This document shows positions 4,200 through 39,049 of a stretch of DNA of 53,470 bases, in pieces. Below the pieces are notes generated by a model that saw nothing but the letters and a program-made list of their open reading frames with translations, made no database searches and was not told where the DNA came from. The stretch comes from Octopus sinensis (Eukaryota), in NCBI RefSeq assembly GCF_006345805.1, contig NW_021833920.1, positions 1-53,470 of the forward strand, given 5' to 3'. How positions within the stretch are numbered: the stretch's first letter is position 1; every line of letters begins with the position of its first letter. Both the position numbers and the translations under genes were made by a program.

Positions 4200-4272
<73 letters not shown>

Positions 4273-4276
<4 letters not shown>

Positions 4277-9745: not shown

Positions 9746-9793
<48 letters not shown>

Positions 9794-9883
9794 ATATATA
9801 CATACACACATACATATATATATATATATGAATATAATAAGCTTTAGATAAATAAATAATAACATAAATATATATATATACAT

Positions 9884-9914
<31 letters not shown>

Positions 9915-11174: not shown

Positions 11175-11205
<31 letters not shown>

Positions 11206-11859: not shown

Positions 11860-11920
<61 letters not shown>

Positions 11921-13027: not shown

Positions 13028-13058
<31 letters not shown>

Positions 13059-13112
13059 ATATATATATATATACATACAAACATATATACATACATATAT
13101 ATATATATACAT

Positions 13113-13155
<43 letters not shown>

Positions 13156-13573
13156 ATAAACCTTTACATAAGAAAATAATAACATATATATATACATACA
13201 CACACACATATATACACATACACACATATATACACATACACACACACATATATATACATGCACACACACACATATATATACATACACACACACACATATA
13301 TATACATACACAAACACACACAAACACACATATATATACTTACACACACACACATATATATATACATGCACACACACATAAATATATACATACACACACA
13401 TAAAAATATACATACACACACATACATATATACATACACACACACATAGATATATATACATACACACACACATATATATATACATACACACATATATATA
13501 TATACATATATATATACATACAAACATATATACATACATATATATATATATATATAGATATATAATATATATA

Positions 13574-13613
<40 letters not shown>

Positions 13614-15498: not shown

Positions 15499-15553
<55 letters not shown>

Positions 15554-17410: not shown

Positions 17411-18250
17411 TGTACATCAGAACAAGGTAAATACCTAGTTAGTCTGTAGCTTGTGCAGAATCCGGTGCTCCCGTATGTATATCAGAACAAGGTAAATACC
17501 TAGTAAGTCTGTAGCTTGTGCAGAATCCGGTGCTCTCGTAGGTACATCAGAACAGGGTAAATACCTAGTAAGTCTGTAGCTTGTGCAGAATCCGGTGCTC
17601 CCGTAGGTACATCAGAACAAGGTAAAAACCTAGTCAGTCTGTAGCTTGTGCAGAAGCCGGTGCTCCCGTAGGTACACCAGAACAATGTAAATACCTAGTA
17701 AGTCTGTAGCTTGTGCAGAATCCGGTGCTCCCGTAGGTACATCAGAACAAGGTAAATACCTAGTAAGTCTGTAGCTTGTGCAGAATCTGGTGTTCCTGTA
17801 GGTACATCAGAACAAGGTAAATACCTAGTAAGTCTGTAGCTTGTGCAGAAGCCGGTGCTCCCGTAGGTACACCAGAACAAGGTAAATACCTAGTAAGTCT
17901 GTAGCTTGTGCAGAGTCCGGTGCTCCCGGAGGTACATCAGAACAATGTAAATACCTAGTCAGTCTGTAGCTTGTGCAGACTCCGGTTTTCCCGTAGGTAC
18001 ATCAGAACAAGGTAAATACCTAGTAAGTCTGTAGCTTGTGCAGAATCCGGTGCTCCCGTAGGTACATCAGAACAAGATAAATACCTAGTCAGTCTGTAGC
18101 TTGTGCAGAGTCCGGTGCTCCCGTAGTTACATCAGGAAAAGGTAAATACCTAGTAAGTCTGTAGCTTATGCAGAATCCGGTGCTCCCATATGTACATCAG
18201 AACAAGGTAAATACCTAGTAAGTCTGTAGCTCGTGCAGAGTCCGGTGCTC
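17410..18250 (+). repeat. 65-bp satellite array A (~13 units)
   Basis: Unit GTACATCAGAACAAGGTAAATACCTAGTAAGTCTGTAGCTTGTGCAGAATCCGGTGCTCCCGTAG (65 nt). Strand marks relative orientation only. Confidence 0.97.
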
Positions 18251-18904
18251 ATAATATTTTGTTTTGTGTAGGGAGACCACAGTGGACAGCAGTACTCAAG
18301 GTGGGGTCGGGCAAAAGTGGAGAAGAGAAGGATAATAGCGTGGGAATCTCTCGACTGGAAGGTTCTGAGAATCCAGGAACACATTCTGCGGGCCATGTCA
18401 ACTTTGCTGCTTATATGTGTAGCCCAGCTTATGTTGTTGTCCACTGTTACTCCCAAGTCTCTGATGTTGTTGGATGCCATGAGAATTTCTCCAGAAGGAA
18501 GAGAGTATGGGAGTTTTAGAGCGTCCTCCCTTCCAAAGTGGATCAGTTCGAATTTGTCTTCATTTAGCAACATGTTATTCTTTTCCGCCCATTGGACAAC
18601 AGCCAGTAGGTCTGACTGAAGGTTTATTCGGTCATCCACGCCATTGATGACCTTCTGGAGCTTGGAATCATCAGCGAAGGTTCTGATGTTACTGTGTTTG
18701 ATGGTGTCAGTAATATCATTTATGTAGATGATGAAGAGAAGTGGGCCCAACACAGTGCCTTGTGGGACACCACTGCTGACTTTGGCTGGGCTGGATTTGA
18801 CTCCTTCGACTACAACATGTTGGGTTCTGTTAGACAGGAAGCACTTGATCCACTGCAGCAGCTTTCCAGTGACACCAATATTGGACAGTGACACCAATAT
18901 TGGA
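18251..18904 (-). mobile_element. CR1-group LINE RT fragment, truncated at both ends
   Basis: Open frame [29 protein letters not shown]...[21 protein letters not shown]...TFADDSKL...RDLGVTVD...RPHLEYCCPLWSPY. It differs in sequence from the 7.6-9.7 kb copy. The 3' end is replaced by 65-bp satellite. Confidence 0.92.
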
Positions 18905-18912
18905 CACCAATA

Positions 18913-18963
<51 letters not shown>

Positions 18964-19055
18964 ATATATATATGTGTATATATATATATATGTGTATATA
19001 TATATGTGTATATATATATATATATATATGTGTGTGTATATATATGTACATATGG
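18905..19055. repeat. (TA)n/(TG)n microsatellite
   Basis: Seen directly. Confidence 0.9.
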
Positions 19056-19709
19056 TTTCTTCTTGTTAGCTTGGACACTGGCTTTTAACAATAGGTTTCC
19101 CTTATCATGAAAAGTAATTTTTAATCGAAAAAATTTCTAAACGATGAACTTTTATCTTACCTTATGTATTATATATTACTTATTTATATGTTTCCTATAT
19201 ATATATTTTTTAATATCTTTTTATATATCTATATATTTATATATTTCTTTGTATTTTTATATATTTATTATTCTAGATGTTGTAATGTTAAAAAAAAAAT
19301 ATTTTTTTAGTCGCTAAATTATTAATCATTAACTTTTAACCGCGATGGACTGTATTCACACATTTTGTTTATATTTTTCTTATATGCTTGTATTGATGGG
19401 TTGTGTTTCATCATCCGTGATTTTATGCATGTATATTCTATATGAAAGAAAAAGCATTATGTGATTAAATGTTCGAGATATGAAATGTTACGTGGATGAC
19501 CTTATATTTGTTTGTTCTGCAACCATAGTTTAATATAGATGTACATATACATTCATACATACAAGTTCCATTCTAGTAGGTTTCAAGAATATAACACCTT
19601 AATATTTCACCTTTTCTCATATTTTATGCCTAAGACATTTATTTTCTATTCTGGTTTTTATATACCTCTTTCTATTAATACTTTATATTTATATCTATAT
19701 ATATAAATA

Positions 19710-20090
19710 TAAGTAGCTTCATTACGAACCACACGGTTGCAGGTTCAGTCCCACTGCGTGGCGCCTTGGGAAAGTGTCTTCTACTATAGCCTCGGGCCGA
19801 CCAAAGTCTTGTGAGTGGATTTGGTAGACGGATACTGAAAGAAGCCGGTCATATATATATATATATTATATATAATATATATATATATATATATATGGTG
19901 TGTGTGTCAGTGTTTGTCCCCTCAATATCGCTTGACAACCAATGCCGGCGTGTTTAACACGCCATAACTTAGCGGTTCGGCAAAAGAGACGGATAGAATA
20001 AGTACTAGGCTTACAAAGTATAAGTCCTGGGGTCGATTTGCTGGACTAAAGGCGTTGCTCCAGCATGACTGAAAGAAGTAAAATAAAAAT
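19710..20090 (+). mobile_element. tRNA-derived SINE (A-box missing), with internal (TA)n and 3' region
   Basis: TAAGTAGCTT...GGTTCAGTCCC (B-box-like, 19742-19752)...CCTTGGGAAAGTGTCTT (CORE-like, 19764-19780)...GTGAGTGGATTT matches 1-128. It continues through (TA)n (19851-19897) into a 3' region ending GCTCCAGCATGACTGAAAGAAGTAAAA. Confidence 0.85.
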
Positions 20091-20194
20091 CTCTAATATA
20101 TTTTAACCGATACGGGAGCAACAGTTTGAGACGAAGACGCATTTTGTCCAAATGCGGAATGGATAAAACAGCCGATAACTGTAAAGCTGTTCTA

Positions 20195-20417
20195 ATGTTG
20201 CCTGTCTTGTTTCTATCGTTGTTCGCAAAACAAGTTCGTGTTCGATGATTTCGTATTTCATGTTTTCGTTGCCTAAAACGCTGCTGCATATGTGTAGGTG
20301 ATATTGTACATACATGCAAACACATATATACATACACAAACATATATACATACACTTACATACACACACATGCATACATGCACACAGACATATACATACA
20401 GACATGTATACAGACAT

Positions 20418-20450
<33 letters not shown>

Positions 20451-20573
20451 TATACACATACACACCATCACCTCTGAACACATCTTTTTATGTTGCCTGT
20501 CATGTTTTACATGTGTTGCTTTCGTTGTTTGCAAAACAATATCGTTTTCGATGTTATCCTATTTCATGTTTTC
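20195..20573 (+). repeat. Pair of diverged ~75-85-bp direct repeats (20195-20267, 20490-20573)
   Basis: Shared ATGTTGCCTGTC, TCGTTGTT(C/T)GCAAAACAA, TTCGATG and TATTTCATGTTTTC, separated by CA/TA microsatellite. Confidence 0.65.
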
Positions 20574-20689
20574 TAAAACCCGGACCAGACCGGACACGGC
20601 ACGACCGCTCACTGTGGTGTCGTAGCCCTGGACAGTGAGCCCGATGGCGCCCAGAGCGTTGCCCATGGCACTCCATGGACCCTAAGTAA

Positions 20690-20787
20690 GACATGTGTAA
20701 AATTTTATTGAAATTGGTTGTGTAGTTCTCAAGTTTTAGGGAATCAGACGGACAGACACACATTCTCAGTTTTGTATGTATGTATGA
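20690..20787 (-). mobile_element. Helitron-like 5' terminal segment (copy 1)
   Basis: Minus strand starts TCATACATACATACAAAACTGAGAATGTGTGTCTGTCCGTCTG, i.e. TC + AT-rich + (TGTC)n, analogous to the start of the element at 3816. No matching hairpin-CTAG end was found. Confidence 0.5.
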
Positions 20788-21223
20788 CCTGATATATTAG
20801 GTCACTCTTGAGTGCTACTGGTAAAATGTAACCCAGTACAACCTGTTGCATGGTCGGGTCGTCGGCGACTAAACCGGTAACCCCACCAAGCTTGCTTGAT
20901 GAGGAGGGTTTTTATTGGACACCCTACGGGATGAAAAATAAAATCCCTCAAACGGCGGAGGAACACTTGAGAGTCAACGGCCATCCAATAAATGTGTAAT
21001 TTTTTTTGCTTAAGGCTGTATCATACGCGGCGACATAGAAATAATCGGACTGAATACTCGATCGCGCGGTTAAACCATTGGGAGTTAAGGACTCCTAGCC
21101 TTTGTTAGGGTGTCCTTCTAGAAGATAACTCAGGTAACTGGGATAACTCCGACATAAAACCTGCGGCTCAGTGGTTACCGATGATGTTGACTTGTTCTTC
21201 TTTTCGGATTATGGCTGCTGTTG
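20709..21223 (+). repeat. Direct repeat copy 1 (~515 bp) of the pair flanking the satellite block
   Basis: Colinear with 36003-36509, roughly 93% identical by manual count, with one 9-bp indel. Confidence 0.95.
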
Positions 21224-21224
21224 A

Positions 21225-22796
21225 CTAGTAAGTCTGTAGCTTGTGCAGAGTCCGGTGCTCCCGTAGGTACATCAGAACAAGGTAAATACCTAGTAAGTCT
21301 GTAGCTTGTGCAGAGACCGGTGCTCCCGTAGGTACATCAGAACAAGGTAAATACCTAGTAAGTCTGTAGCTTGTGCAGAGACCGGTGCTCCCGTAGGTAC
21401 ATCAGAACAAGGTAAATACCTAGTAAGTCTGTAGCTTGTGCAGAATCCGGTGTCCCCGTAGGTACATCAGAACGAGATAAATACCTAGTATGTCTGTAGC
21501 TTGTGCAGAGTCCGGTGCTCCCGTAGGTACATCAGAACAAGGTAAATACCTAGTAAGTCTGTAGCTTGTGCAGAGTCCAGTGCTCCCGTATGTACATCAG
21601 AGCAAGGTAAATACCCAGTCAGTCTGTAGATTGTGCAGAGTCCGCTGCTCCCATAGGTACATCAGAACGAGGTAAATACCTAGTAAGTCTGTAGCTTGTG
21701 CAGAGACCGGTGCTCCCGTAGGTACATCAGAACGAGGTAAATACCTAGTAAGTCTGTAGCTTGTGCAGAATCCGGTGCTCCCGTAGGTACATCAGAACAA
21801 GGTAAATACCTAGTAAGTCTGTAGTTTGTGCAGAGACCGGTGCTCCCGTAGGTACATCAGAACAAGGTAAATACCTAGTAAGTCTGTAGCTTGTGCAGAG
21901 TCCGGTACTCCCGTAGGTACAACAGAACAAGGTAAATACCTTGTAAGTCTGTAGCTTGTGCAGAGTCCGGTGCTCCCGTAGGTACGTCAGAACAAGGTAA
22001 ATAAATAGTAAGTCTGTAGCTTGTGCAGAGTCCGGTGCTCCCATAGGTACATCAGAACGAGGTAAATACCTAGTAAGTCTGTAGCTTGTGCAGAGACCGG
22101 TGCTCCCGTAGGTACATCAGAACGAGGTAAATACCTAGTAAGTCTGTAGCTTGTGCAGAATCCGGTGCTCCCGTAGGTACATCAGAACAAGGTAAATACC
22201 TAGTAAGTCTGTAGTTTGTGCAGAGACCGGTGCTCCCGTAGGTACATCAGAACAAGGTAAATACCTAGTAAGTCTGTAGCTTGTGCAGAGTCCGGTACTC
22301 CCGTAGGTACAACAGAACAAGGTAAATAACTTGTAAGTCTGTAGCTTGTGCAGAGTCCGGTGCTCCCGTAGGTACGTCAGAACAAGGTAAATAAATAGTA
22401 AGTCTGTAGCTTGTGCAGAGTCCGGTGCTCCCGTAGGTACATCAGAACAAGGTAAATAACTAGTAAGTCTGTAGCTTGTGCAGATTCCGGTGCTCCCGTA
22501 GGTACATCAGAGCAAGGTAAATACCTAGTAAGTCTGTAGCTTGTGCAGAGTCCGGTGCTCCCGTAGGTACATCACAGAAAGGTAAATACCTAGTGAGTCT
22601 GTAGCTTGTGCAGAGTCCGGTGCTCCCGTAGGTACATCAGAGAAAGGTAAATACCTAGCAAGTCTGTAGCTTGTGCAGAATCCGGTGCTCCCACGGGCAC
22701 ATCAGAACAAAGTAAATACCTAGTAAGTCTGTAGCTTGTGCAGAATCCGGTGCTCCCGTAGGTACACCAGAACAAGGTAAATACCTAGTAAGTCTG
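21225..22796 (+). repeat. 65-bp satellite array B (~24 units)
   Basis: Same unit and orientation as array A. Confidence 0.97.
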
Positions 22797-25700
22797 AACA
22801 AGTGGACCGCCAAACCAGATCGATAAAATGACCTAGCGGACCACCAAACCAGATCGATAAAATAACTTAGCGGACCAACAAACGAGATCGATAAAATGAT
22901 ATAGCCGACCCCCAAACGGGATCGATAAAATGACTTTGCGGACCGCTAAACGAGATCGACAAAATGACCAAGCGGACCGCCAAACGAGATAAAATCACTT
23001 AGCTGACGACGAAGCGAGAGAGAAAAAATGACCTAGCTGAGGACGAAGCGAGATCGATAAAATGAATTATTGGACAATCAAACGAGATCGATAAAATGAC
23101 CGAGTGGACCGCCAAACCATATCGATAAAATCACCGAGTGAACCGCCGAACGAGATCGATAAAATGACAGCGGACCGCCAAACGAGTTCGACAAAATAAC
23201 TTAGTGGACCGCCAAACGAGATCCACAAAATGACTTAGCGGTTCGCCAAAGTAGTTCGATGAAATGACTTAGCGGATCGCCAAAATAGATCGATAAATTT
23301 AAAAAGCGGTCCGCCAATCAAAATCGATAAAATGACTTAGCGGACCGCCAAACGAGATCGATAAAATAACTTAGCGGACCGCAAAACGGGATCGATAAAA
23401 TGACTTAGCGGAACGCCAAACGAGATCGACAAAATGATTTAGCGGACCGCCAAACGAGATCGATTAAATGACCGAATGGACTGCCAAACGAGATCGATAA
23501 AATGACTTAGTGGACCGCCAAACGAGATCTCGTTTGGTGGTCCACAAATGACCTAGCGGACCGTTAAACGAGATTGACAAAATGACCTGTCAGACCGCCA
23601 AACGAGATCGATAAAATGAATTAGCGGACCACTAAACGAGAAAGATAAAATGACTTAGCGGACCACCAAACGGGATCGATAAAATGACTTAGCCGACCTC
23701 CAAACTAGATCACGTTTGGTGGTCTGCAAATGACTTAGCGGAGCGTTAAACGGGATCGACAAAATGAACTGGCCGACCGCGAAACGAGATCGATAAAATG
23801 ACCTAGCGGACCGCCAAACGAGATCGATAAAATGAGTTAGTGGACCGCCAAGCGAGATCGATAATATGCATTAGCGGACCACCAACCGAGATCGATAAAA
23901 TGATATAGCGGACCGCTAAACGAGATCGACAAAATGACTTACCGGACCACCAAAGGAGAGCGATAAAATGAATTAGCGGACCACCAAACGAGATCGATAA
24001 AATGAATTAGCTGACCAATAACCTAGATCAATAAAATGACTTAGCGGACCGCCAATCGAGGTGGATAATATGGCCTAGCGGACCGCCAAAAGAAATCAAT
24101 AAAATGAATTAGCGGACCACCAAACGAGATCGATAAAATGAATTAGCGGACCAATAAACTAGATCAATAAAATGACTCAGCGGACCGCCAATTGAGGTGG
24201 ATAAAATGGCCTAGCGGACCGCCAACCGAGATCGATGAAATGAATTAGCGGTTCACCAAACGAGATTGATGAAATGACTTAGCGGATAGCCAAACGAGAC
24301 CGATAAAATGAATCAGCAGACTGCCAAACGAGATCGATAAAATGATATAGCGGGCCGCTAAACGAGCTCGACAAAATAACCTAGCGGACCGCCAAAAGAG
24401 ATCGATAAAATGAATTAGCGGAGCACCAAACGAGATCGATAAAATGAATTGGCGGACCAATAAACTAGATAAATAAAATGATTTAGCGGACCGCCAATCG
24501 AGGTGGATAAAATGGCCAAGCGGACCGCCAAACGCGATCGATGAAATGAATTAGTGGTTCACCAAACAAGATCGATGAAATTACTTAGCGGATCGCCAAA
24601 CGAGACCGATAAAATGAATCAGTGGACTGCCAAACGAGATCGATGAAATGACCTAGCGGACCACCAAACGAGATCGATAAAATGACTTAGCGGACCACCA
24701 AACGAGATCGATAAAATGACTTAGCCTACCGCCAAACGAGATCTCGTTTGGTGGTCCGCAAATAACTTTGCGGAGCGTTAAACGAGATCGACAAAATGAT
24801 CTGGAGGACCGCCAAACGAGATCGATAAAATGACCGAGTGGTCCGCCAAACTGGATCGATAAAATGACAGCGGACCGCCAAACGAGGTCGATAAAATGAC
24901 ATTAGTGCACAGCAAACCGAGATCGATAAAATGACTTAGCAGACGATGAAGCAATATCGATAGAATGACTTAGCGGACCGCCAAACGAGATCCATAAAAT
25001 GACTTAGCAGAAAACAAAACAAGATAGATAAAATGACTTAGCAGACCACAAAACCAGATCGATAAAATGACTTAGAGGACCACCAAACGAGATGGATAAA
25101 ATGACTTAGCTGACCGCGAAACGAGATATCGTTTGGTGGTCCGCAAATGACTTAGCGGAGCGTTAAACGAGATCGAAAAAATGCTCTGGCGGACCGCCAA
25201 ACGAGATCGATAAAATGATTTAGCGGACCCCTAAACGAGACAGACAAAATGAGCTAGCGGACCGCCAAAAGAGATCGATAAAATGAATTAGCAGACCACC
25301 AAACGAGTTCGATAAAATGAATTAGCGGACCAATAAACGAGATCGATAAAATGAGCAAGTGGACCGCCAAACGATATCGATAAAATGACTTAGTAGACCA
25401 CCAAACCAGATCGATAAAATGACATAGCAGATTACGAAACGAGATCGATAAAATGACTTAGTGGACCACCAAAGGAGATCGATAAAATGATATAGCGGAC
25501 CGCTAAACGAGATCGACAAAATGAACTAGTGAACCGCCAAGAGAGAACGATAAAATGAACTAGCGGACCACCAAACGAGATCGATAAAATGAACGAGTGG
25601 ACCGCCAAACTAGATCGATAAAATGTCTTAGCGGACTACTAAACAAGATCGACAAAATGACATAGCGGACCACCAAACTAGATCGAGAAAATGACTAAGT

Positions 25701-28700
25701 GGACCGCCAAAAGAGATCGATAAAAATAATTAGTGGACCACCAAACGAGATCGATAAAATGAAGTAGCGGGGCGCTAAACGTGATCGACAAAATGACCTA
25801 GTGGACCGCCAAAAGAGATCGATAAAATGAATTAGCGGACCACCAAACGAGATCGATAAAATGAATTAGCGGACCAATAAACTAGATCAATAAAATGACT
25901 TAACGGATCGCCAATCGAGGTGGATAAAATGGCCTAGCGGGCCGCCAAACGAAATCGATGAAATGAATTAGCGGTTCACCAAACAAGATTGATGAAATAA
26001 CTTAGCGGATCACCAAACGAGACCGATAAAATGAATCAGCGGACTGCCAAACGAGATCGATAAAATGACTTAGCGGACCACCAAACGATATCGATAAAAG
26101 GACTTAGCGGACCACAAAACGACATCGATAAAATGACCTAGCCGACCGCCAAACGAGATCTCGTTTGGTGGTCCGCAAATTACTTAGCGGAGCGTGTGAA
26201 ACGAGATCGACAAAATGATCGAGTGGTCCGCCAAACGGGATCGATAAAATGACAGCGCACCGCCAAACTAGATCGATAAAATGACTTAGTGGACCGCACA
26301 CCGAGATCGATAAAATGATCTAGCGGACCGCCAAACGAGATCGATAAAATGAGTTAGTGGACCGCCAAGCGAGATCGATAAAATGACTTAGCGAACCACC
26401 AAGCGAGATCGATAAAACGATATTGGGGACCGCTGAACGAGATCGACAAAATGACCTAGCGGACCGCCAAAAGAGATCGATAAAATGAGTTAGTGGACCG
26501 CCAAGCGAGATCGATAATATGCATTAGCGGACCACCAACCGAGATCGATAAAATGATATAGCGGACCGCTAAACGAGATCGACAAAATGACTTACCGGAC
26601 CACCAAAGGAGAGCGATAAAATGAATTAGCGGACCACCAAACGAGATCGATAAAATGAATTAGCTGACCAATAACCTAGATCAATAAAATGACTTAGCGG
26701 ACCGCCAATCGAGGTGGATAATATGGCCTAGCGGACCGCCAAAAGAAATCAATAAAATGAATTAGCGGACCACCAAACGAGATCGATAAAATGAATTAGC
26801 GGACCAATAAACTAGATCAATAAAATGACTCAGCGGACCGCCAATTGAGGTGGATAAAATGGCCTAGCGGACCGCCAACCGAGATCGATGAAATGAATTA
26901 GCGGTTCACCAAACGAGATTGATGAAATGACTTAGCGGATAGCCAAACGAGACCGATAAAATGAATCAGCAGACTGCCAAACGAGATCGATAAAATGATA
27001 TAGCGGGCCGCTAAACGAGCTCGACAAAATAACCTAGCGGACCGCCAAAAGAGATCGATAAAATGAATTAGCGGAGCACCAAACGAGATCGATAAAATGA
27101 ATTGGCGGACCAATAAACTAGATCAATAAAATGACTTAGCGGACCGCCAATCGAGGTGGATAAAATGGCCAAGCGGACCGCCAAACGCGATCGATGAAAT
27201 GAATTAGTGGTTCACCAAACAAGATCGATGAAATTACTTAGCGGATCGCCAAACGAGACCGATAAAATGAATCAGTGGACTGCCAAACGAGATCGATGAA
27301 ATGACCTAGCGGACCACCAAACGAGATCGATAAAATGACTTAGCGGACCACCAAACGAGATCGATAAAATGACTTAGCCTACCGCCAAACGAGATCTCGT
27401 TTGGTGGTCCGCAAATAACTTTGCGGAGCGTTAAACGAGATCGACAAAATGATCTGGAGGACCGCCAAACGAGATCGATAAAATGACCGAGTGGTCCGCC
27501 AAACTGGATCGATAAAATGACAGCGGACCGCCAAACGAGGTCGATAAAATGACATTAGTGCACAGCAAACCGAGATCGATAAAATGACTTAGCAGACGAT
27601 GAAGCAATATCGATAGAATGACTTAGCGGACCGCCAAACGAGATCCATAAAATGACTTAGCAGAAAACAAAACAAGATAGATAAAATGACTTAGCAGACC
27701 ACAAAACCAGATCGATAAAATGACTTAGAGGACCACCAAACGAGATGGATAAAATGACTTAGCTGACCGCGAAACGAGATATCGTTTGGTGGTCCGCAAA
27801 TGACTTAGCGGAGCGTTAAACGAGATCGAAAAAATGCTCTGGCGGACCGCCAAACGAGATCGATAAAATGATTTAGCGGACCCCTAAACGAGACAGACAA
27901 AATGAGCTAGCGGACCGCCAAAAGAGATCGATAAAATGAATTAGCAGACCACCAAACGAGTTCGATAAAATGAATTAGCGGACCAATAAACGAGATCGAT
28001 AAAATGAGCAAGTGGACCGCCAAACGATATCGATAAAATGACTTAGTAGACCACCAAACCAGATCGATAAAATGACATAGCAGATTACGAAACGAGATCG
28101 ATAAAATGACATAGCAGATTACGAAACGAGATCGATAAAATGACTTAGTGGACCACCAAAGGAGATCGATAAAATGATATAGCGGACCGCTAAACGAGAT
28201 CGACAAAATGAACTAGTGAACCGCCAAGAGAGAACGATAAAATGAACTAGCGGACCACCAAACGAGATCGATAAAATGAACGAGTGGACCGCCAAACTAG
28301 ATCGATAAAATGTCTTAGCGGACTACTAAACAAGATCGACAAAATGACATAGCGGACCACCAAACTAGATCGAGAAAATGACTAAGTGGACCGCCAAAAG
28401 AGATCGATAAAAATAATTAGTGGACCACCAAACGAGATCGATAAAATGAAGTAGCGGGGCGCTAAACGTGATCGACAAAATGACCTAGTGGACCGCCAAA
28501 AGAGATCGATAAAATGAATTAGCGGACCACCAAACGAGATCGATAAAATGAATTAGCGGACCAATAAACTAGATCAATAAAATGACTTAACGGATCGCCA
28601 ATCGAGGTGGATAAAATGGCCTAGCGGGCCGCCAAACGAAATCGATGAAATGAATTAGCGGTTCACCAAACAAGATTGATGAAATAACTTAGCGGATCAC

Positions 28701-31700
28701 CAAACGAGACCGATAAAATAAATCAGCGGACTGCCAAACGAGATCGATAAAATGACTTAGCGGACCACCAAACGATATCGATAAAAGGACTTAGCGGACC
28801 ACAAAACGACATCGATAAAATGACCTAGCCGACCGCCAAACGAGATCTCGTTTGGTGGTCCGCAAATTACTTAGCGGAGCGTGTGAAACGAGTTCGACAA
28901 AATGATCGAGTGGTCCGCCAAACGGGATCGATAAAATGACAGCGCACCGCCAAACTAGATCGATAAAATGACTTAGTGGACCGCACACCGAGATCGATAA
29001 AATGATCTAGCGGACCGCCAAACGAGATCGATAAAATGAGTTAGTGGACCGCCAAGCGAGATCGATAAAATGACTTAGTGAACCACCAAGCGAGATCGAT
29101 AAAACGATATTGGGGACCGCTGAACGAGATCGACAAAATGACCTAGCGGACCGCCAAAAGAGATCGATAAAATGAATTAGCTCACCAACAAACGAGATCG
29201 AAAAAATAAATAGCGGACCGCTAAACGAGATCGACAAAATGACCTAGCGAACCGCCAAAAGAGATCGATAAAATGACTTAGCGGACCACCAAACGAGATC
29301 GATAAAATGAACGAGTGGCCCGCCAAACATGATCGATAAAATGACTTAGCGGAACGCTAACCGAGATCGACAAAATGACATAGCGGACCGCCAAACGAGA
29401 TCGATAAAATGAGTTAGTGGACCACCAAACGAGATCGAAAAAATAAATAGCGGAACGCTAAACGAGATCGACAAAATGACCTAGCGAACCGCCAAAAGAA
29501 ATCGATAAAATGACTTAGCGGACCACCAAACGAGATCGATAAAATGACCGAGTGGACCGCCAAACGTGATCGATAAAATTACTTTGCGGACCACGAATCG
29601 AGATGGATAAAATGACCTAGCGGACCGCCAAACAAGATCGATAAAATGAGTTAGTGGACCACCAAACGAGATCGATAAAATGATATAGCGGACCGCTAAA
29701 CGAGATTGACAAAATGTCCTAGCGGACCGCCAAAAGAGATCGATAAAAATAATTAGTGGACCACCAAACGAGATCGATAAAATGAATTAGCTGACCAATA
29801 AACTAGATCAATAAAATGACTTAGCGGACCGCTAATCGAGGTGTATAAAATGGGCTAGCGGACCGCCAAACGAGATCGATGAAATGAATTAGCGATTCAC
29901 CAAACGAGATTGGTGAAATGAGTTAGCGGATCGCCAAACGAGACCGATAATATGAATCAGCGGACTGCCAAACGAGATCGATAAAATGACCTAGCGGACC
30001 ACCAAAAAAGATCGATAAAATGACTTAGCCGACCGCCAAACGAGATCTCGTTTGGTGGTCCGCAAATGACCTAGTGGAGCGTTAAACGAGATCGACAAAA
30101 TGATCTGGCAGACTGCCAAACGAGATCGATAAAATGACCGAGTGGTCCGCCAAACTGAATCGATAAAATGACAGTGGACCGCCAAACGAGATCGATATAA
30201 TGACTTAGTGGACCGCAAACCAAAATCGATAAAATGACTTTGCAGACAATGAAGCGATATCGATAGAATGACATAGCGGACCGCCAAACGAGATCCATAA
30301 AATGACTTAGCGGACAACCAAACAAGATAGATAAAATGACTTAGTGGACCACCAAACGGGAGCGATAAAGTGACTTAGCCGACCGCCAAACGAGATATCG
30401 TTCGGTGGTCCGCAAATGATTTAGCGGAGCGTTAAACGAGATCGAAAAAATGCACTAGCGGACCGCCAAACGAGATCGATAAAATGAATAAGCGGACCGC
30501 TAAATGAGACCGACAAAATTACCTAGCGGACCGCCAAAACAGATCAAAAAAAAGAATTAGCAGACCACCAAACGTCATCGATAAAATGAATTAGAGGACC
30601 AATAAACGAGATCGATAAAAAGATTTAGCGGACCGTTAAACGTGATCGACAAAATGACTCAGTGGACCGCCAAACGAGATCGATAAAATGAATTAGCAGA
30701 CCACCAAACGAGATCGATAAAATGACTTAGCGGACCACCAAACGAGATCGATAAAATGACCTAGCCGACCGCCAAACGAGATCTCGTTTGGTGGTCTGCA
30801 AATGACTTAGCGGAGCGTTAAACGAGATCGACAAAATGATCTGGCGGACCGCCAAACAAGATCAATAAAATGATCGAGTGGTCCGCCAAACGGGATCGAT
30901 AAAATGACAGTGGACCGCCAAACGAGATCGATAAAATGACTTAGTGGACCGCAATCCGAGATCGATAAAATGATATAGCGGACTGCCAAACGAGATCGAT
31001 AAAATGAGTTAGTGGACCGCCAAGCGAGATCGATGAAATGACTTAGCGGACCACCAAACGAGATCGATAAAATGATATAGCGGACTGCTAAACGAGGTCG
31101 AAAAAATGACCTAGCGGACCGCCAAAAGAGATCGATAAAATGAATTAGCGGACCACCAAACGAGATCGATAAAAGGATTTTGCGGACCAATAAACTACAT
31201 CAAAAAAATGACTTAGCGGACCGCCAATCGAAGTGGATATAATGGCCTAGCGGACCGCCAAAAGAGATCGATAAAATGAATCAGTGGACCGCCAAACGAG
31301 ATCGATAAAATGACTTAGCGGACCGCCAATCGAGACGGATAAAATGACCTAGCGGACCGCCAAACGAGATCGATTAAATGAGTTAGTGGACCACAAAGCG
31401 AGATCGATATAATGACTTAGCAGACCACCAAACGATGATCGATAAAATGATATAGCGGACCGCTAAACGAGATCGATAAAAATAATTAGTGGACCACCAA
31501 ACGAGATCGATAAAATGAATTAGCGGACCAATAAACTAGATCAATAAAATGACTTAGCGGACCGCCAATCGAGGTGGATGAAATGGCCTAGCGGACCGCC
31601 AAACGAGATCGATGAAATGATTTAGCGGTTCACCAAACAAGATTGATGAAATGACTTAGCGGATCGCCAAAGGAGACCGATAAAATGAATCAGCGGACTG

Positions 31701-34700
31701 CCAAACGAGATCGATGAAATGACCTAGCGGACCACCTAACGAGATCGATAAAATGACTTAGCGGACCACCAAACGGGATCGATAAAATGACTTAGCCGAC
31801 CGCCAAACGAGATCTCGTTCGGTGGTCCGCAAATGACCTTGTGGAGCGTTAAACGAGATCGACAAAATGATCTGGCGGACCGCCAAACGAGATCGATAAA
31901 ATGACCGAGTGGTCCGCCAAACTGGATCGATAAAATGACAGTGGACCGCCAAACGAGATCGATATAATGCCTTAGTGGACCGCAAACCGAGATCGATAAA
32001 ATGACGTAGCAGACGATGAAGCGATATCGATAGAATGACTTAGCGGACCGCCAAACGAGATCCATAAAATGACTTAGCGGACAACCAAACAAGATAGATT
32101 AAATGACTTAGCGGACCACCAAACGAGATCGACAAAATGACCTAGCGGACCACCAAACAAGATCGATAAAATGAACGAGTGGACCGCCAAACATGATCGA
32201 TAAAATGACCTAGCGGACCGCTAACTGAGACGACAAAATGACATAGCGGACCGCCAAACGAGATCGATAAAATGACTTAGCGGACCGCCAATCGAGACGG
32301 ATAAAATGACCTAGCGGACCGCCAAACGAGATCGATTAAATTAGTTTGTGGACCGCCAAGTGAGATCGATATAATGACTTAGCAGACCACCAAACGAGAT
32401 CGATAAAATGATATAGCGGACCGCTAAACGAGATCGATAAAATGAATTAGCGGACCAATAAACTAGATCAATAAAATGACTTAGCGGACCGCCAATCGAG
32501 GTGTATGAAATGGCCTAGCGGACCGCCAAACGAGATCGATGAAATGAATTAGCGGTTCACCAAACAAGATTGATGAAATGACTTAGTGGATCGCCAAACG
32601 AGACCGATAAAATGAATCAGCGGACTGCCAAACGAGATCGATAAAATGAACGAGTGGTCCGCCAAACGGGATCGATAAAATGATAGCGGACCGCCAAACG
32701 AGACCGATAAAATGACTTAGTGGACCGCAAACCGAGATCGATAAAATGACTTAGCAGACGATGAAGCGATATCGATAGAATGACTTAGCGGACCGCCAAA
32801 CGAGATCGATAAAATGAATTAGCGGACCACCAAACGAGATCGATAAAATGACCTAGCGGACCACCAAACGAGATCGATAAAATGAATTAGCTGACCACCA
32901 AACGTGATCGATAAAATAATTGAGCTGACCTCCATACGAGATCTCGTTTGGTGGTCCGCAAATGACTTATGGGAGCGTTAAACGAGATCGACAAAACGAT
33001 CTGGCGGACCGCGAAACGAGATCGATAAAATGATCTAGCGGACCGCCAAACGAGATCGATAAAATGAGTTAGTGGACCGCCAAGCGAGATCGATAAAAAT
33101 AATTAGTGGACCACCAAACGAGATCGATAAAATGACCTAGCGGACCGCCAAACAAGATCGACAAAATGAGTTAGCGGACCACCAAACGAGATCGATAAAA
33201 TGAATTAGCAGACCACCAAACGGGATCGATAAAATGAATTAACGGACCAATAAACTAGATCAATAAAATGACTTAGCGGACCGCCAATCGAGGTGGATGA
33301 TATGGCCTAGCGGCCGCCAAAGAGGATCGGTGAAATGAATTAGCGGTTCACCAAACGAGATTCATGAAATGACTTAGCGGATCGCCAAACGAGAGCGATA
33401 AAATGAATCAGTGGACTGCCAAACGAGATCGATAAAATGACTTAGCGAACCACCAAATGAGATCGATAAAATGACCTAGCCAACCGCCAAACGACATTTC
33501 GTTTGGTGGTTCGCAAATGACTTAGCGGAGCGTTAAACGAGATCGACAAAATGATCTGGCGGACCGCCAAACGATATCGATAAAATGATCGAGTGGTCCG
33601 CCAAACGTGATCGATAAAATGACAGCAGACCGCCAAACGTGATCGATAAAATGACCTTGTTGACCACAAACCGAGATCGATAAAATGACTTAGCAGACGA
33701 TGAAGCGATATCGATAGAATGAATTAGCGGAACGCCAAACGAGATCCATAAAATGACCTAGCGGACCACCAAACGAGATCGATAAAATGATATAGCGGAC
33801 CACCAAACGAGATCGATAAAATGAATTAGCGGACCACCAAACGAGATCGATAAAATGACTAAGCAGACCACCAAACGAGATCGATAAAATGAGTTAGCAG
33901 ACCGCCAAACGAGATCGATAAAATGACTTAGCGGACCACGAAACTTTATCGATAAAATGACTTAGCAGACCGCTAAACGAGTTCGATAAAATGACTTAGC
34001 GGTTTGCCAAACGAGATCGATGAAATGACCTAGCGGTTCACCAAACGAGATCGATGAAATGTCTAGCGGATCGCTAAACGAGACCGATGAAATAACTCAG
34101 CGCACCACCAAACGAGTTCGATAAAATGACATAGCGGACCGCCAATTGAGACGGATATAATGACTTAGCGGACCGCCAAACGAGATCGATAAATTACTTA
34201 GCGGACCACCGAATGAGATCGATAAAATGAATTAGCGGACCGTCAAACCAGTTCGATAAAATGACCTATTGGACCACCAAACGAGATCGATAAAATGACA
34301 GTGGACCGACAAACGAGTTCAATAAAATGACCTTGGGGACCGCCAAACGTGATCGATAAAATGATCTAGCGGTTCACGAAAGGGGATCGATAAAAAGACT
34401 TAGCGGTTCACCAAACGAGATCGGTAAAATGACTTAGCGGATAGCCAAAATTGATCGATAAAATGAGTTAGCGGTCTGCCAATCGAGACGGATAAAATGA
34501 TATAGTGGACCGCCAAATGAGTCGATAAAATAAATTAGTGGTCCGCCAATCGCGACGGATAAAATGAGCTACAGGACAGCCAAACGAGACCGACGTAATG
34601 ACTTAGCGGACCACCAAACGAGATCGATAACATGACTTTGCGGGACACCAAACGAGATCGATAAATTGACTTAGCGGACAACTAAACGACATCGATAAAA

Positions 34701-35995
34701 TGACCTAGCGGACCACCAACAGAGATCGATAAAATGACATAGCGGACCGTTAAAGGAGATCGACAAATTGAACTAGCGGACCGCCAAACGAGATCGACAA
34801 AATGACTCAGCGGACCGCCAAATGAGATCGATAAAATGAATTAGTGGACCACCAAACGAGATCGATAAAATGACCTAGCAGACTGCTAAACGAGATTGAC
34901 AAAATGATGTAGCGGACCGCGAAACGAGATCGATAAAATGACCGAGTGGACCGCCATACGAGATCGATAAAATGACCGAGTGGACCACCAAACGAGATCG
35001 GTAAAATAACTTAGTGGACCGCCAAACGAGATCGATAAAATGACATAGCGGACTGCCAATCGAGATCGATAAAATGACCTAGCGGTTTGCCAAACGAGAT
35101 CGATGAAATGACCTAGCGGTTCACCAAACGAGATCGATGAAATGACTTAGCGGATCGCTAAACGAGTACGATAAAATGAATTAGCAGACCGCTAAACGAG
35201 ATCAACAAAATGACCTAGCGAACTGCCAAAAGAGATCGATAAAATGAATTAGCGGACTACCAAACGAGATCGATAAAATGAATTAGCGGACCACCAAACG
35301 AGATCGATAAAATGAATTAGCGGACCACCAAACGAGATTGACAAAATGACTTAGCGTACCGCCAAACAAGATCGATAAAATGAGTTAGCGGACCGCCAAA
35401 CGAGATCGATAAAATGACTTAGCGGACCGCCAATCGAGATCGATAAAATGCATTAGTGGACCACCAAACGAGATCGATAAAATGACTTTGCGGACTGCCA
35501 AACATGATCGATAAAATGACCTAGCGGACCGGCAAACGAGATCGATAAAATGAATTAGCGGAACGGGAAACGAGATCGATAAAATGACTTAGCCGACCGC
35601 CAAACGAGATCGATAAAATGACTCAGTTGACAGCCAAACGAGACCGATAAAATGACGTAGTGGACCGCCAAACGAAATCTATGAAATGAATTAGCGGACC
35701 GCCAAACGAGATCGATAAAATGATCTAGTGGTTCGGACGAACGAGATCGATAAAGTGACTTACGGACCGCCAAATGGGATCGATAAAATGAATACGCGGA
35801 CCGCCAATCGCGATCGATAAAATGACTTAGCGGACCGCCAAACGAGATCGATAGAATAACCAGCGGACCGCCAAACAAGATCGATAAAATGACCTAGTGG
35901 ACCGCCAAACCAGATCGATAAAATGACGTAGCGGACCGCTAAAGGAAATCGATGAAATGACGTAGCGGAACGCCAAACGAGATCGATAAAATGAC
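22797..35995 (+). repeat. 34-bp satellite, main array (~385 units) with higher-order structure
   Basis: Consensus AAATGACTTAGCGGACCGCCAAACGAGATCGATA (34 nt); the monomers are divergent. Confidence 0.97.
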
Positions 35996-36002
35996 ATTTG
36001 AA

Positions 36003-36509
36003 TGAAATTGGTTGTGTAGTTCTCAAATTTTAGTGAATGAGACAGACAAACAGACACATTCTCAGTTTTGTATGTATGTATGACCTAATATATAAGGTCA
36101 CTCTTGAGTGCTATTGGTAACATGTAACCCAGTACAACCTGCTGCATGGTCGGGTCGTCGGTGACTAAACCGGTAACATCACCAAGCTTGCTTGGTCAAG
36201 AGGGTTTTTATTGGACACCCTACGGGATGAAAGATAAAATCCCTCAAACGGCGGAGGAACTCTTGAGAGTCAACGGCCATCCAATAAATGTGTAATTTTT
36301 TTTGCTTAAGGCTGTATCATGCGCGGCGACATAGAAATAATCGGACTGAATACTCGATCGCGCGGTAAAACCATTGGGAGTTAAGGACTCCTAGCCTTTG
36401 TTAGGGTGTCCTTCTAGAAGGTAACTGGGATAACTCCGACATAAAACTGCGGCTCAGTGGTTACCAATGGTTTTGACTTGTTCTTCTTTACGGACTATAG
36501 CTGCTGTTG
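36003..36509 (+). repeat. Direct repeat copy 2 (~507 bp); includes a Helitron-like 5' terminus on the minus strand (36003-36083)
   Basis: Colinear with 20709-21223. Confidence 0.95.
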
Positions 36510-36644
36510 CTTATTGAGTGGGATTGACTCAGTGCACAGCCTTTCCTTACTTAAAAAAAAATCTTCTTACACAGGCTTTGCACGATAACAACATTGATTA
36601 AGCTTCGTGCAATGGCCATACACGATAACGAGGGCGCAGCCACC
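36084..36644 (+). mobile_element. Unclassified dispersed repeat with several stem-loops (possible retroelement 5' leader or SINE-like)
   Basis: GC-richer segment GGTCACTCTTGAGTGC...GGGCGCAGCCACC, ending at microsatellite. Its first ~430 bp recur at 20788-21223. The class assignment is inference only. Confidence 0.4.
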
Positions 36645-37519
36645 ATGTATGTATGTATCTTTACTCATATATATATATATACCAATTTATTTTTATATAC
36701 ATACATACATGCGTGCATATAAACATGTGTGTCTGTGTGCACGTGCGTGACTCAAATTGCAACATAGTGCAACGTTCACATTATATTTTTGTGTTTTTAC
36801 AATCAATAATATTAATACGCTAACTTTTTTTGTACGTACCTGTTGTCTGCGTCACATTTCTTTGAAGTGGCAAAGCGAGAGAGAGGAGGAAAAAGAAGAG
36901 CGAGAGAAAAAGAGAGTAAGAGAGAAAAAGAGATTGTGAAAGAGACATCCGTGGTGATGGCGTTCGTATTGTGCTTTTAAATGTTTCAGAGAGGAAGTAA
37001 AAAAGAAAGGAAGAGAGTGAGAGAGAGAGTGAAGAGAGAGTGAGAGTGAGAGAGAATGAAAGAGTGATTTGTGACAGCTTTCGTTTTGTATTTTCAAATG
37101 CTTATTACATCTCAAGAGAAGTAGAGACCCGGGGACATAGACACAGCAAATATTGGCTGTCAGCTTCACTTTTCATTATCACACGAGAATAAAATTAACT
37201 TACAAATGGCTGAGTACTCCACAGCTACAACTCGAGGCGCACACACACATACATATATATATATTCCACTGTAACTAGGTAAATAAAATCTTCGAACAGA
37301 CGGTCAGTAGCGACACCTGCGGGTCTGACAACGCTGCATTGATAAAGGGCAACAACCCTGAAACATGTCTGCAGATATCTGACTAGTAAGGTGAAGCGGC
37401 TGACTTCCCCTGTTCGAAGGTTTGTAATGGACGCAGGTTCGTGTGTCAAATAGCTAGCTAGAGGCGATGGCCTCTTGGAGCTAATTAGTGACAGCTTTAG
37501 TCTTATATTTATAGACTAC

Positions 37520-38011
37520 CAAAGAGTGTGCCGAAAGAGATCAAAGAGGTACGCCGAAAGTGTTCAAAGAGGGTGCCGAAAGAGATCAAAGAGGTATGCT
37601 GAAAGTGATCAAAGAGGGTGCCGAAAGAGATCAAAGAGGGTGCCGAAAGAGATCAAAGAGTGTACCGAAAGAGATCAAAGAGTGTGTCGAAAGAGATCAA
37701 AGAGGGTGCCGAATGAGATCAAAGAGGGTGTCGAAAGAGATCAACGAGGTTGCCGAAAGAGATCAAAGAGGGTGCCGAATGAGATCAAAGAGGGTGCCGA
37801 AAGAGATCAAAGAGTGTGGAGAAAGAGATCAAAGAGGAGTGCCGAAAGAGATCAAAGACGAGTGCTGAAGGAGATCAAAAAGGAGTGCCGAAGGAGATCA
37901 AAGAGGGTGCTGAAAGAGATCAAAGAGGAGTGCCGAAAGCGATCAAAGAGTGCCGAAAGAGATCGAAGATTGTGCTGAAAGTGATCAAAGAGGAGTCCCG
38001 CAAGAGATCAA
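37520..38011 (+). repeat. 22-bp satellite (~22 units)
   Basis: Unit GCCGAAAGAGATCAAAGAGGGT. Confidence 0.95.
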
Positions 38012-39049
38012 ATAAAATGACGTAGCGTTTAACCAAACGAGATTGAGAAAACTATGTAGCATTTCAACAAACGTGATCGATAAAATGACGTAGCGGTTTG
38101 CCAAACGGGATCGTTACAATGACGTAGCGGTTCACCAATCGATAAATTGACGTTGCGGTTTGCCAAACGAAATCGATAAAATGACTTAGTGGTTCGACAA
38201 ACAAGATCGATAAAATGACGTAGCGGCTCGCCGAACGAGATCGATAGAATGACGTAGCGGTTCGCTAAACGATGTTGATAAAATGACGTAGCTGTTCGCC
38301 AAACAAAATCGTTAAAATGACGTAGCGGTTCGCAAAACGGTTTCGAGAAAATGACTTAGCGATTCGCTAAATGAGATCGATAAAAAAACCTAGTGGTTCG
38401 ACAAATGAGTTCGATAAATAGACTTTGGCGTTTGCTAAACAAGATCGATAAAATGACGTAGCGGTTCGCAAAACGTGATCGATAAATTGACGTAGCAGTT
38501 CTCCAAACGAGATCGCTAAATTGACTTTAAGGTTCGACAAACGAGATCGATAAAATAACGCCGTGGATCGCTACACCAGATCGATAAAATGCCGTAGTGG
38601 TTCCCAAACGAAATCGATAAAATGACGTAGTGATTCGCCAAATGAAATCGATGAAATGATGTTTTCGTTCGCAAAATGAGATCGATAAAATGACGTAGCG
38701 GATCGCCAAACGAGATCGATAAAATGACTCGCGGTTCTAAAAACGAGATCGATAAAATGACGTAGCGGTTCGACAAACGACACTGACAAAATGACTTAGC
38801 GGTTTGCCAAATGAGATTGTTAACATGACGTAGCGGTTCAACAATCGAGATCGGTAAATTGACTTGGTTGTTCGCCAAACGAGATCGATGAATTTATGTA
38901 GCTCTTTGTCAAACGAGATCGAAAAATGACTTAGCAATTCGTTAAACGAGATCGATAAAATGACGTAGCCTTTTCGCGATACGAGATATATAAAATGACG
39001 TAGCGTTTCGCTAAACCAGATAGATAAATTGACCTAGTTGTTCGCCAAA
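38012..39049 (+). repeat. 34-bp satellite, second array (~30 units; TGACGTAGCGGTTCG subfamily)
   Basis: Consensus AAATGACGTAGCGGTTCGCCAAACGAGATCGATA; same orientation as the main array. Confidence 0.95.

What the first reader, a model, noticed from the sequence alone, without database searches (positions are those of the whole stretch)
20709..36509. A 14.8-kb two-satellite block bracketed by ~510-bp direct repeats, like a giant target-site duplication
Seen: 20709-21223 and 36003-36509 are ~93% identical. Both span the same junction between a Helitron-like terminus and an unrelated repeat (CAGTTTTGTATGTATGTATGACCTRATATATWAGGTCACTC), so they are a local duplication and not two independent insertions. 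Copy 1 continues leftward into further sequence and is cut on the right by 65-bp satellite. Copy 2 is cut on the left by 34-bp satellite and continues rightward (CTTATTGAGTGGG...36644). Removing 21224-36002 plus one copy reconstructs a seamless locus. Inference: the satellite block arrived or expanded as a unit with flank duplication (template switching, rolling-circle or eccDNA reintegration), and it could be excised by recombination between the repeats.
Basis: partly seen in the sequence, partly recalled or inferred. Interest (0 to 1): 0.72.

Follow-up and report, generated by a model that had tools for sequence, protein, structure and literature searches.

The report
Local duplication flanking octopus satellite arrays
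In a satellite-rich stretch of an octopus chromosome, a non-coding segment of about 515 bp was duplicated locally and its two copies now sit either side of 14.8 kb of satellite DNA; this is an ordinary rearrangement of repeat-rich DNA, not a new kind of insertion.

Summary
Window 20702-21223 and 35996-36509 are direct repeats, the only two copies in the window. They are 92.4% identical with gaps and 94.5% by substitutions alone. They bracket a 65-bp satellite (21225-22796) and a 34-bp satellite (22804-35995).

The window is octopod: a LINE fragment is 96.8% identical to Octopus sinensis.

New here: the repeat unit starts with TTATTGA, and the same 7-mer recurs 1 bp after copy 2. That 7-mer occurs only three times in 53 kb. 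This marks a microhomology-bounded local duplication and argues against two independent insertions.

The intervening block is not foreign. The same two satellite families flank the neighbouring non-satellite islands in the same order and orientation. The 34-bp satellite derives from the tail of an octopod SINE. It also holds a 2.65-kb internal duplication at 99.5-100% identity, so it is still growing in place.

"Arrived as a unit" and "Helitron-like terminus" are not supported.

I could not test whether the segment is dispersed genome-wide, because no octopod genome could be searched. The mechanism therefore stays inferred. The best guess is replication template switching or unequal exchange, followed by array growth in place. 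Interest is modest.

The parts
20705..20711 (+). m1: 7-bp TTATTGA at the start of copy 1
   Evidence: one of only 3 occurrences in the window
20702..21223 (+). Copy 1 of the ~515-bp repeat (A1). It continues leftward into unique sequence L (20583-20701) and is followed by an orphan A at 21224, then the 65-bp satellite.
20907..21176 (+). Low-divergence core of the repeat: 4 substitutions in 260 columns (1.5%), against 24 in 252 (9.5%) outside it
   Evidence: scan permutation p about 0.01; Fisher p = 5.5e-5
21225..22796 (+). 65-bp satellite array a2 (24.2 units). Same family and orientation as 17412-18250; inverted relative to 41216-53470.
22797..22803 (+). Junction J4: 7-bp filler AACAAGT between a truncated 65-bp unit and the first 34-bp unit
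22804..35995 (+). 34-bp satellite array A (about 388 units), derived from a SINE tail. It contains a near-identical 2.65-kb tandem duplication (about 23751-26514 against 26404-29090) and about 12 palindromic variant units.
35999..36005 (+). m*: TGAATGA, a 5/7 copy of the 7-mer at the start of copy 2
35996..36509 (+). Copy 2 of the repeat (A2). It is preceded directly by 34-bp satellite and continues rightward into unique sequence R.
36511..36517 (+). m2: exact TTATTGA, 1 bp after the end of copy 2
17412..18250 (+). 65-bp satellite array a1, the left flank of the non-satellite island that ends with copy 1
38004..39049 (+). 34-bp satellite array B (GGTTCGCC variant, closer to the SINE), the right flank of the island that starts with copy 2
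19710..20080 (+). Octopod tRNA-type SINE copy. Its tail segment (about 19963-19998) is the progenitor-like sequence of the 34-bp satellite.

Best explanation
A non-coding, non-satellite segment of about 515 bp, in a satellite-rich region of an octopus chromosome (Octopus sinensis or a close relative), was duplicated locally in direct orientation. The duplicated unit is bounded by a 7-bp direct repeat (TTATTGA). The structure reads: L - m - A' - [satellites] - m* - A' - m - R.

The DNA between the copies comes from the neighbourhood. It consists of the 65-bp satellite that also lies left of the island carrying copy 1, followed by the SINE-derived 34-bp satellite that also lies right of the island carrying copy 2, in the same orientation.

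The most likely history has two parts. First, a replication-based or unequal-exchange rearrangement produced a microhomology-bounded duplication, with short pieces of the two flanking arrays copied into, or later inserted at, the junction between the copies. Second, the arrays grew in place by unequal crossing-over to the present 14.8 kb.

Shown: the repeat, its boundaries, the 7-bp repeats, the identity and SINE origin of the satellites, and recent growth of the array in place. Inferred: the order of events and the template-switching mechanism.
For: - Repeat: 92.4% identity, only two copies, same orientation.
- 7-mer: TTATTGA lies at 20705 and 36511 and occurs only 3 times in 53 kb. Copy 2 starts with a 5/7 version. 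Chance of such a boundary match is about 0.02.
- Satellite layout: a1 (17412-18250, +) and a2 (21225-22796, +) belong to one 65-bp family. Mean monomer identity is 0.921 for a1-a2, against 0.906 and 0.910 to the inverted array a3. The 34-bp arrays A and B have the same orientation.
- Timing: the A and B consensus sequences differ at 3 of 34 positions (8.8%), similar to the 9.5% outer divergence of the two copies.
- Growth in place: a 2.65-kb tandem duplication inside the 34-bp array at 99.5-100% identity.
- Regional pattern: the same 'unit - array - unit' layout recurs at two smaller scales. B/B' (about 90 bp, 85% identical) flank an ACAT microsatellite, and the 0.7-2 kb higher-order units at 4174-17411 are separated by AC/AT microsatellites.
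- No copy of the element in 20.5 kb of O. sinensis DNA that holds at least 3 SINE copies.
Against: - Copy number in the genome is untested: no octopod genome could be searched. All external nulls are uninformative, as the SINE controls show.
- Divergence between the copies is uneven (core 1.5%, rest 9.5%). This needs gene conversion or a conserved core, and a conserved core would fit a mobile family.
- If the duplication used the 7-bp microhomology directly, the satellites must have entered within 1-2 bp of the copy junction. That is a coincidence of about 0.5% unless the site is fragile or the events were coupled.
- If everything happened in one template-switching event, the 7-bp repeat itself goes unexplained.
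- Microhomology at the satellite junctions is only 0-3 bp and ambiguous.
- The three 65-bp arrays have no clear diagnostic variants.
Confidence: 0.5

Rival explanations
1. The two copies are independent relics of a dispersed repeat, such as a retroposon or another mobile element. One is cut on its right by the 65-bp satellite and the other on its left by the 34-bp satellite. The shared 515 bp is just the overlap, or the full element.
For: Octopod genomes are rich in repeats, and the islands around both copies are mosaics of LINE and SINE pieces. The uneven divergence with a 98.5%-identical core resembles a family with a conserved core. Another repeat fragment here (18251-18466) has the same boundary in an O. 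sinensis locus, so element ends do abut satellites in this region.
Against: The copies share the 7-8 bases at their left edge, and the same 7-mer follows copy 2; independent insertions would not predict this. There are only two copies in about 11 kb of non-satellite sequence, and none in 20.5 kb of O. sinensis. I found no terminal inverted repeats, poly(A) tail, Pfam domain or Rfam family.
Confidence: 0.2
2. One reading: a pre-formed two-satellite block, for example a reintegrated circle or rolling-circle product, entered the L-A-R locus at a staggered break, and fill-in gave a 515-bp duplication resembling a target-site duplication.
For: The insert sits exactly between two complete copies of the unit. 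eccDNA-mediated spread of satellite arrays is documented in Tribolium and proposed in Drosophila (PMC11610590, read; PMC7403614, listed but not read).
Against: No known insertion process gives 0.5-kb target duplications. The two 7-mers are in direct orientation, which suits annealing rather than opposed nicks. The block repeats the local flanking satellites in their local order, so no outside donor is needed. Most of the block's length is younger than the duplication. The 65|34 junction is a deletion-type join, not a circle-type join (my inference).
Confidence: 0.12
3. Assembly artefact: a mis-join or collapse in a satellite-rich region placed two alleles or paralogues of the segment on one contig.
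For: Long satellite arrays and 100%-identical 2.65-kb internal repeats are where assemblers fail.
Against: The two copies differ at 28 substitutions and 3 indels, so they are not one sequence used twice. All junctions are single and clean, and the window contains no N.
Confidence: 0.08
4. The whole 15.8 kb is one composite element with 0.5-kb terminal direct repeats (LTR-like), inserted at a TTATTGA target and flanked by that 7-bp target-site duplication.
For: An exact 7-mer lies immediately left of copy 1 and 1 bp right of copy 2.
Against: There are no TG...CA termini, no primer-binding site or polypurine tract, and no gag/pol; the interior is pure satellite. LTR elements give 4-6 bp duplications (my knowledge). 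Copy 2 is itself preceded by a 5/7 version of the 7-mer, which a tandem duplication predicts and an LTR structure does not.
Confidence: 0.05

Closest known systems
Microhomology-bounded tandem duplication and complex template-switching rearrangements (FoSTeS/MMBIR type)
   Same: The duplicated segment starts with a short direct repeat and is followed by the same repeat. Extra DNA from nearby templates sits at the junction. The copies are in direct orientation.
   Different: The junction insert is now 14.8 kb of satellite, most of it later growth. Microhomology at the two satellite junctions is weak. The process itself cannot be observed from one sequence.
Tandem duplication by unequal exchange in arrays ('unit - array - unit' higher-order repeats)
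   Same: The window holds clear cases: 0.7-2 kb units separated by AC/AT microsatellites at 4174-17411, and the 90-bp B/B' pair around an ACAT microsatellite.
   Different: In this case the two flanking arrays belong to different families, so a single unequal exchange within one array cannot produce the layout.
SINE-derived satellites (scaled reptiles, PMC10702118; limpet PcH-Sat from Nin-SINE, PMC11121367; both listed, known to me by title and abstract only)
   Same: The 34-bp unit aligns over its full length with the tail of an octopod tRNA-type SINE: 28-29 of 33 positions, z = 9.5-11.
   Different: The unit is a very short piece (34 bp) of the SINE. I found no description of it in cephalopods in the searchable library.
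Satellite arrays with conserved transposon-like flanks, and eccDNA-mediated spread (Tribolium Cast satellites, PMC11610590)
   Same: Arrays are bordered by recognisable non-satellite sequence, and short A/T-rich microhomology lies near the junctions.
   Different: In Tribolium the two ends carry different flank sequences, seen at many loci. Here the same sequence lies at both ends of one locus, and no circle or second locus is known.
Non-autonomous Helitron/Helentron elements carrying tandem repeats (DINE-1 and HINE type; my knowledge)
   Same: The left part of the repeat has a (GACR)n-like run followed by a short palindrome, a layout reminiscent of such elements. Those elements can seed satellites.
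   Different: No Helitron end hallmarks were found. The satellites are unrelated to the element's flanks. In those elements the array lies between two different modules, not between two copies of one module.

Membership tests
Helitron/Helentron terminus | 5'-TC start, 3'-CTRR end preceded by a GC-rich hairpin about 10-20 nt upstream, insertion between A and T without target duplication | tested here: not met
   Read by eye from the sequence, not by a systematic scan. Neither end of the repeat, nor of L-A-R, fits on either strand. The only hairpin near a CTRR (ACCTGATATATTAGGT, then CTGA 17 nt later on the minus strand) is followed by G, not T, and homology continues past it.
Helitron/Helentron terminus | Further copies of the terminus, or a Rep/helicase gene, nearby | tested here: not met
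   No other copy in the window allowing up to 3 mismatches, and no exact match in the 3 loci held at that point. BLAST of the whole element found nothing in the five fetched animal loci. The only coding remnants are RVT_1 fragments.
Target-site duplication of a transposition event | Short duplication (2 to about 20 bp, of a length fixed per family) made by staggered cleavage, flanking one inserted element | tested here: not met
   The duplicated flank is 512-520 bp. The insert is two joined satellite arrays with no element ends.
Microhomology-bounded tandem duplication | The same short direct repeat at the start of the duplicated segment and immediately after its end | tested here: met
   TTATTGA at 20705-20711 and 36511-36517; 3 occurrences in 53,470 bp; random expectation 0.02.
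Template-switching (MMBIR/FoSTeS) rearrangement | Microhomology at each novel junction, and inserted pieces that come from nearby templates | tested here: inconclusive
   The inserted families, their order and orientation match the local flanking arrays. Junction microhomology is only 0-3 bp, or 5 bp if a 9-bp deletion is assumed.
Dispersed mobile-element family | Many unlinked copies with common ends and differing flanks | not testable with these tools
   No octopod genome is searchable. The metagenome and prokaryote scans and the protein library lack octopod non-coding DNA, as SINE controls show.
LTR retrotransposon | TG...CA long terminal repeats, 4-6 bp target duplication, primer-binding site and polypurine tract, gag/pol interior | tested here: not met
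   Ends are AATTGG...GTTGC. The interior is pure satellite, with no primer-binding site or polypurine tract next to the repeats.
SINE-derived satellite (applies to the 34-bp array) | Monomer homologous over its full length to a segment of a SINE present in the same genome | tested here: met
   Both 34-bp variants align with the SINE tail in the window and in O. sinensis, z = 7.3-11.1 against shuffles.
eccDNA-mediated satellite insertion | Circular intermediates carrying the array, and a donor locus with the same internal junction | not testable with these tools
   Needs Circle-seq and the whole genome.

The most novel reading that the evidence does not exclude
The 15.8-kb unit (copy 1 - satellites - copy 2), flanked by an exact 7-bp TTATTGA on both sides, is a mobile composite. 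On this reading it is a satellite-carrying element with 0.5-kb terminal direct repeats that inserted as a whole, and so a vehicle for moving satellite arrays between loci in cephalopod genomes.
Probability: 0.05. Interest if true: 0.75.

Novelty: new member of a known kind. Interest (0 to 1): 0.3.

Why it matters
If the reading is right, this locus records in readable form how satellite-rich DNA is remodelled: a microhomology-bounded duplication whose junction became filled with copies of the two neighbouring arrays, which then grew in place. It also gives a cephalopod example of a satellite born from a SINE tail. This would help anyone annotating octopus repeats or assembling octopus centromere-like regions. 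It does not open a new mechanism, and its main claim still needs a genome-wide copy count.

Tried and rejected
- Satellites derived from the flanks L or R: rejected. Local alignments are no better than shuffles.
- R as a degenerate third copy of the repeat: rejected.
- Structured RNA in the conserved core: z = -1.4 on both strands; no Rfam family at gathering or E-value thresholds.
- tRNA genes: none.
- Coding remnant in the repeat: no Pfam domain in six frames.
- External copies of the repeat, all null:
  - one exact 21-mer in JGI metagenomes gave 0 hits, and the SINE control also gave 0;
  - one exact 27-mer in prokaryote genomes gave 0 hits, while the SINE 17-mer gave 50 hits, close to the roughly 70 chance matches I expect in 596 Gb;
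  - protein-library searches with one ORF and with a six-frame concatenation found nothing;
  - the SINE control found only four clusters of 1-2 members, so the library hardly samples octopod non-coding DNA;
  - exact look-ups of window LINE ORFs found nothing.
- Literature searches for the satellite, SINE and repeat sequences: no hits.
- 22-bp satellite as a derivative of the 34-bp one: not significant, z about 2.
- 65-bp array phylogeny to order events: there are no diagnostic variants beyond one position.
- Phase continuity of the 65-bp array across the island 18251-21224: not continuous; it reads equally as a 29-bp gap or a 36-bp overlap.
Full report
**What is there.** Window 20702-21223 and 35996-36509 are a direct repeat: 92.4% identity over 524 aligned columns, E = 0. 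In detail, there are 28 substitutions in 512 ungapped columns and three indels. It is the only pair of its kind in the window. Copy 1 (A1) runs leftward into unique sequence L. On its right come one orphan base and then a 65-bp satellite (21225-22796, 24.2 units). A 7-bp filler joins that array to a 34-bp satellite (22804-35995, about 388 units), which ends directly at copy 2 (A2). A2 runs rightward into unique sequence R. The 34-bp array has no non-satellite inserts.

**Where the window comes from.** The window is animal DNA, rich in satellites and microsatellites.
- It holds two reverse-transcriptase fragments (Pfam RVT_1). The best named protein match is from Octopus sinensis.
- A fragment at 18251-18466 is 96.8% identical to O. 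sinensis contig VCDQ01000580.1 and shares its left boundary.
- A tRNA-type SINE at 19710-20080, and a partial copy at 1-128, match SINE copies on the same O. sinensis contig at 81-92%.

The source is therefore an octopod, O. sinensis or a close relative.

**Layout of the region.**
- 4174-17411: higher-order units of 0.7-2 kb separated by AC/AT microsatellites.
- 17412-18250: 65-bp satellite a1 (+).
- 18251-21224: a 3-kb non-satellite island (LINE fragment, SINE, microsatellites, L, A1).
- 21225-22796: 65-bp satellite a2 (+).
- 22804-35995: 34-bp satellite A (+).
- 35996-37519: a 1.5-kb island (A2, R, more unique sequence).
- 37520-38012: a 22-bp satellite.
- 38004-39049: 34-bp satellite B (+).
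- 39157-40494: a 73-bp satellite.
- 41216 to the window end: 12.3 kb of the 65-bp satellite, inverted.

**The satellites.** The 34-bp unit aligns over its full length with the tail of the SINE (ACTTAGCGGTTCGGCAAAAGAGACCGATAGAAT): 28-29 of 33 positions match, z = 9.5-11 against shuffles. Variant B (GGTTCGCC) is closer to the SINE than variant A (GGACCGCC). So this is a SINE-derived satellite, a known kind of origin. I found no description of it in the searchable literature. Neither satellite is related to L or R. Inside array A, about 2.65 kb is tandemly duplicated at 99.5-100% identity, while other parts are 81-94% alike. The array is therefore still growing in place, and most of its length is younger than the flanking repeat.

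**The repeat itself.** It is non-coding: stops in all frames, no Pfam domain, no Rfam family, no tRNA, and no significant fold. I saw no terminal inverted repeats, poly(A) tail or Helitron end hallmarks, so 'Helitron-like terminus' remains a recollection, not a result. Divergence between the copies is uneven: 1.5% in a core at 20907-21176 against 9.5% elsewhere (scan permutation p about 0.01). This points to gene conversion between the copies or to a conserved core.

**The boundary signal.** The unit begins with TTATTGA (20705-20711). A2 begins with TGAATGA (35999-36005, 5 of 7). The exact TTATTGA recurs at 36511-36517, one base after A2 ends. This 7-mer occurs only three times in the 53,470 bases. 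Two random 20-bp windows from the unique parts of the window share a 7-mer with probability 0.02. The structure is therefore L - m - A' - [satellites] - m* - A' - m - R. A short direct repeat at the start of a duplicated segment and just after its end is the mark of a microhomology-bounded tandem duplication. It would also fit a single insertion with a target duplication that was later duplicated locally. Two independent insertions would not share these flanking bases.

**Origin of the block.** The block consists of the 65-bp family and then the 34-bp family, both on the + strand. That is the order and orientation in which the same families flank the two islands: a1 on the left and B on the right.
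- Monomers of a1 and a2 are slightly closer to each other (0.921) than either is to the inverted array (0.906 and 0.910).
- The A and B consensus sequences differ at 3 of 34 positions (8.8%), close to the 9.5% outer divergence of A1 and A2.

The simplest history needs no outside donor. The ancestral locus would read: 65-bp array - island (L - m - A' - m - R) - 34-bp array. It underwent a local rearrangement that duplicated m - A' and placed short copies of both flanking arrays between the copies. That needs three novel joins: A'|65, 65|34 and 34|m. The arrays then expanded. The same 'unit - array - unit' layout occurs twice more in the window at smaller scales, so this region is prone to such events.

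**Weak points.**
- If the duplication used the 7-bp repeat directly, the satellites had to enter within 1-2 bp of the copy junction.
- If all joins were made in one template-switching event, the 7-bp repeat is unexplained.
- Microhomology at the satellite joins is 0-3 bp and ambiguous.

The mechanism is therefore inferred, not shown.

**What could not be tested.** The decisive question is whether the segment is dispersed in the genome. Every external route was blind to octopod non-coding DNA.
- The metagenome scan found nothing for the repeat and nothing for the SINE control.
- The prokaryote scan found nothing for the repeat and only chance hits for the SINE.
- A six-frame search of the protein library found nothing. 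The SINE control found only four clusters of 1-2 members, although this SINE is very abundant in octopus genomes to my knowledge.
- The only octopod DNA I could fetch, 20.5 kb of O. sinensis, has at least three SINE copies and no copy of the repeat. That excludes only SINE-like abundance.

**Verdict.** My estimates are:
- local duplication with the satellite block derived from the neighbouring arrays, 0.5;
- two independent relics of a dispersed repeat, 0.2;
- assembly artefact, 0.08;
- one composite element flanked by a 7-bp target duplication, 0.05.

The first, third and fifth readings (0.67 together) all treat the two copies as locally related. This is an ordinary, if tidy, product of satellite-region dynamics. 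The SINE origin of the 34-bp satellite is the most reusable side result.

Noticed in passing
window 22804-35995 and 38004-39049; SINE at 19710-20080: The 34-bp satellite is derived from the tail of an octopod tRNA-type SINE: 28-29 of 33 positions match, z = 9.5-11. The short array B (GGTTCGCC) is closer to the SINE than the long array A (GGACCGCC).
   Followed up: yes
window about 23751-26514 against 26404-29090: A tandem duplication of about 2.65 kb inside the 34-bp array at 99.5-100% identity, with one roughly 34-bp length difference. It is either very recent growth or an assembly effect.
   Followed up: partly
window 23509-33504, about 12 sites (e.g. 23509, 24721, 27374, 31794): Recurrent palindromic variant units in the 34-bp array (GGACCGCCAAACGAGATCTCGTTTGGTGGTCCGC): half a monomer joined to its own reverse complement.
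   Followed up: partly
window 20907-21176: The core of the repeat is 98.5% identical between the copies, against about 90% for the rest (permutation p about 0.01). Gene conversion or a constrained core could explain this; the fold is not significant.
   Followed up: partly
window 20190-20278 and 20488-20576: A direct repeat of about 90 bp (85% identical, 11-bp indel) flanking an ACAT-type microsatellite: the same 'repeat - array - repeat' layout in miniature, just upstream of copy 1.
   Followed up: partly
window 4174-17411: Higher-order tandem repeat. Conserved units (85-95% alike) alternate with AC/AT microsatellites of 0.2-1.1 kb. It is interrupted at 7618-9678 by a LINE fragment with RVT_1 pieces on the minus strand.
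   Followed up: partly
window 18251-18466; L001 1075-1290: A LINE-derived fragment is 96.8% identical to O. sinensis contig VCDQ01000580.1, and homology starts at the same base in both. The 65-bp satellite a1 therefore abuts a natural repeat boundary, not a random break.
   Followed up: partly
window 41216-53470: 12.3 kb of the 65-bp satellite in inverted orientation, running off the window end. Segments of it are up to 99.4% identical to the first 176 bp of the small array next to copy 1.
   Followed up: partly
window 37520-38012 and 39157-40824: Two further satellites, 22 bp and about 73 bp. The 22-bp array joins 34-bp array B at a shared GAGATC motif, but its relation to the 34-bp unit is not significant (z about 2).
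   Followed up: partly
window 18250/18251 and 21224/21225: The 65-bp array stops at monomer position 36 left of the island and restarts at position 1 right of it. This reads equally as a 29-bp loss or as a 36-bp duplication flanking the 3-kb island.
   Followed up: no
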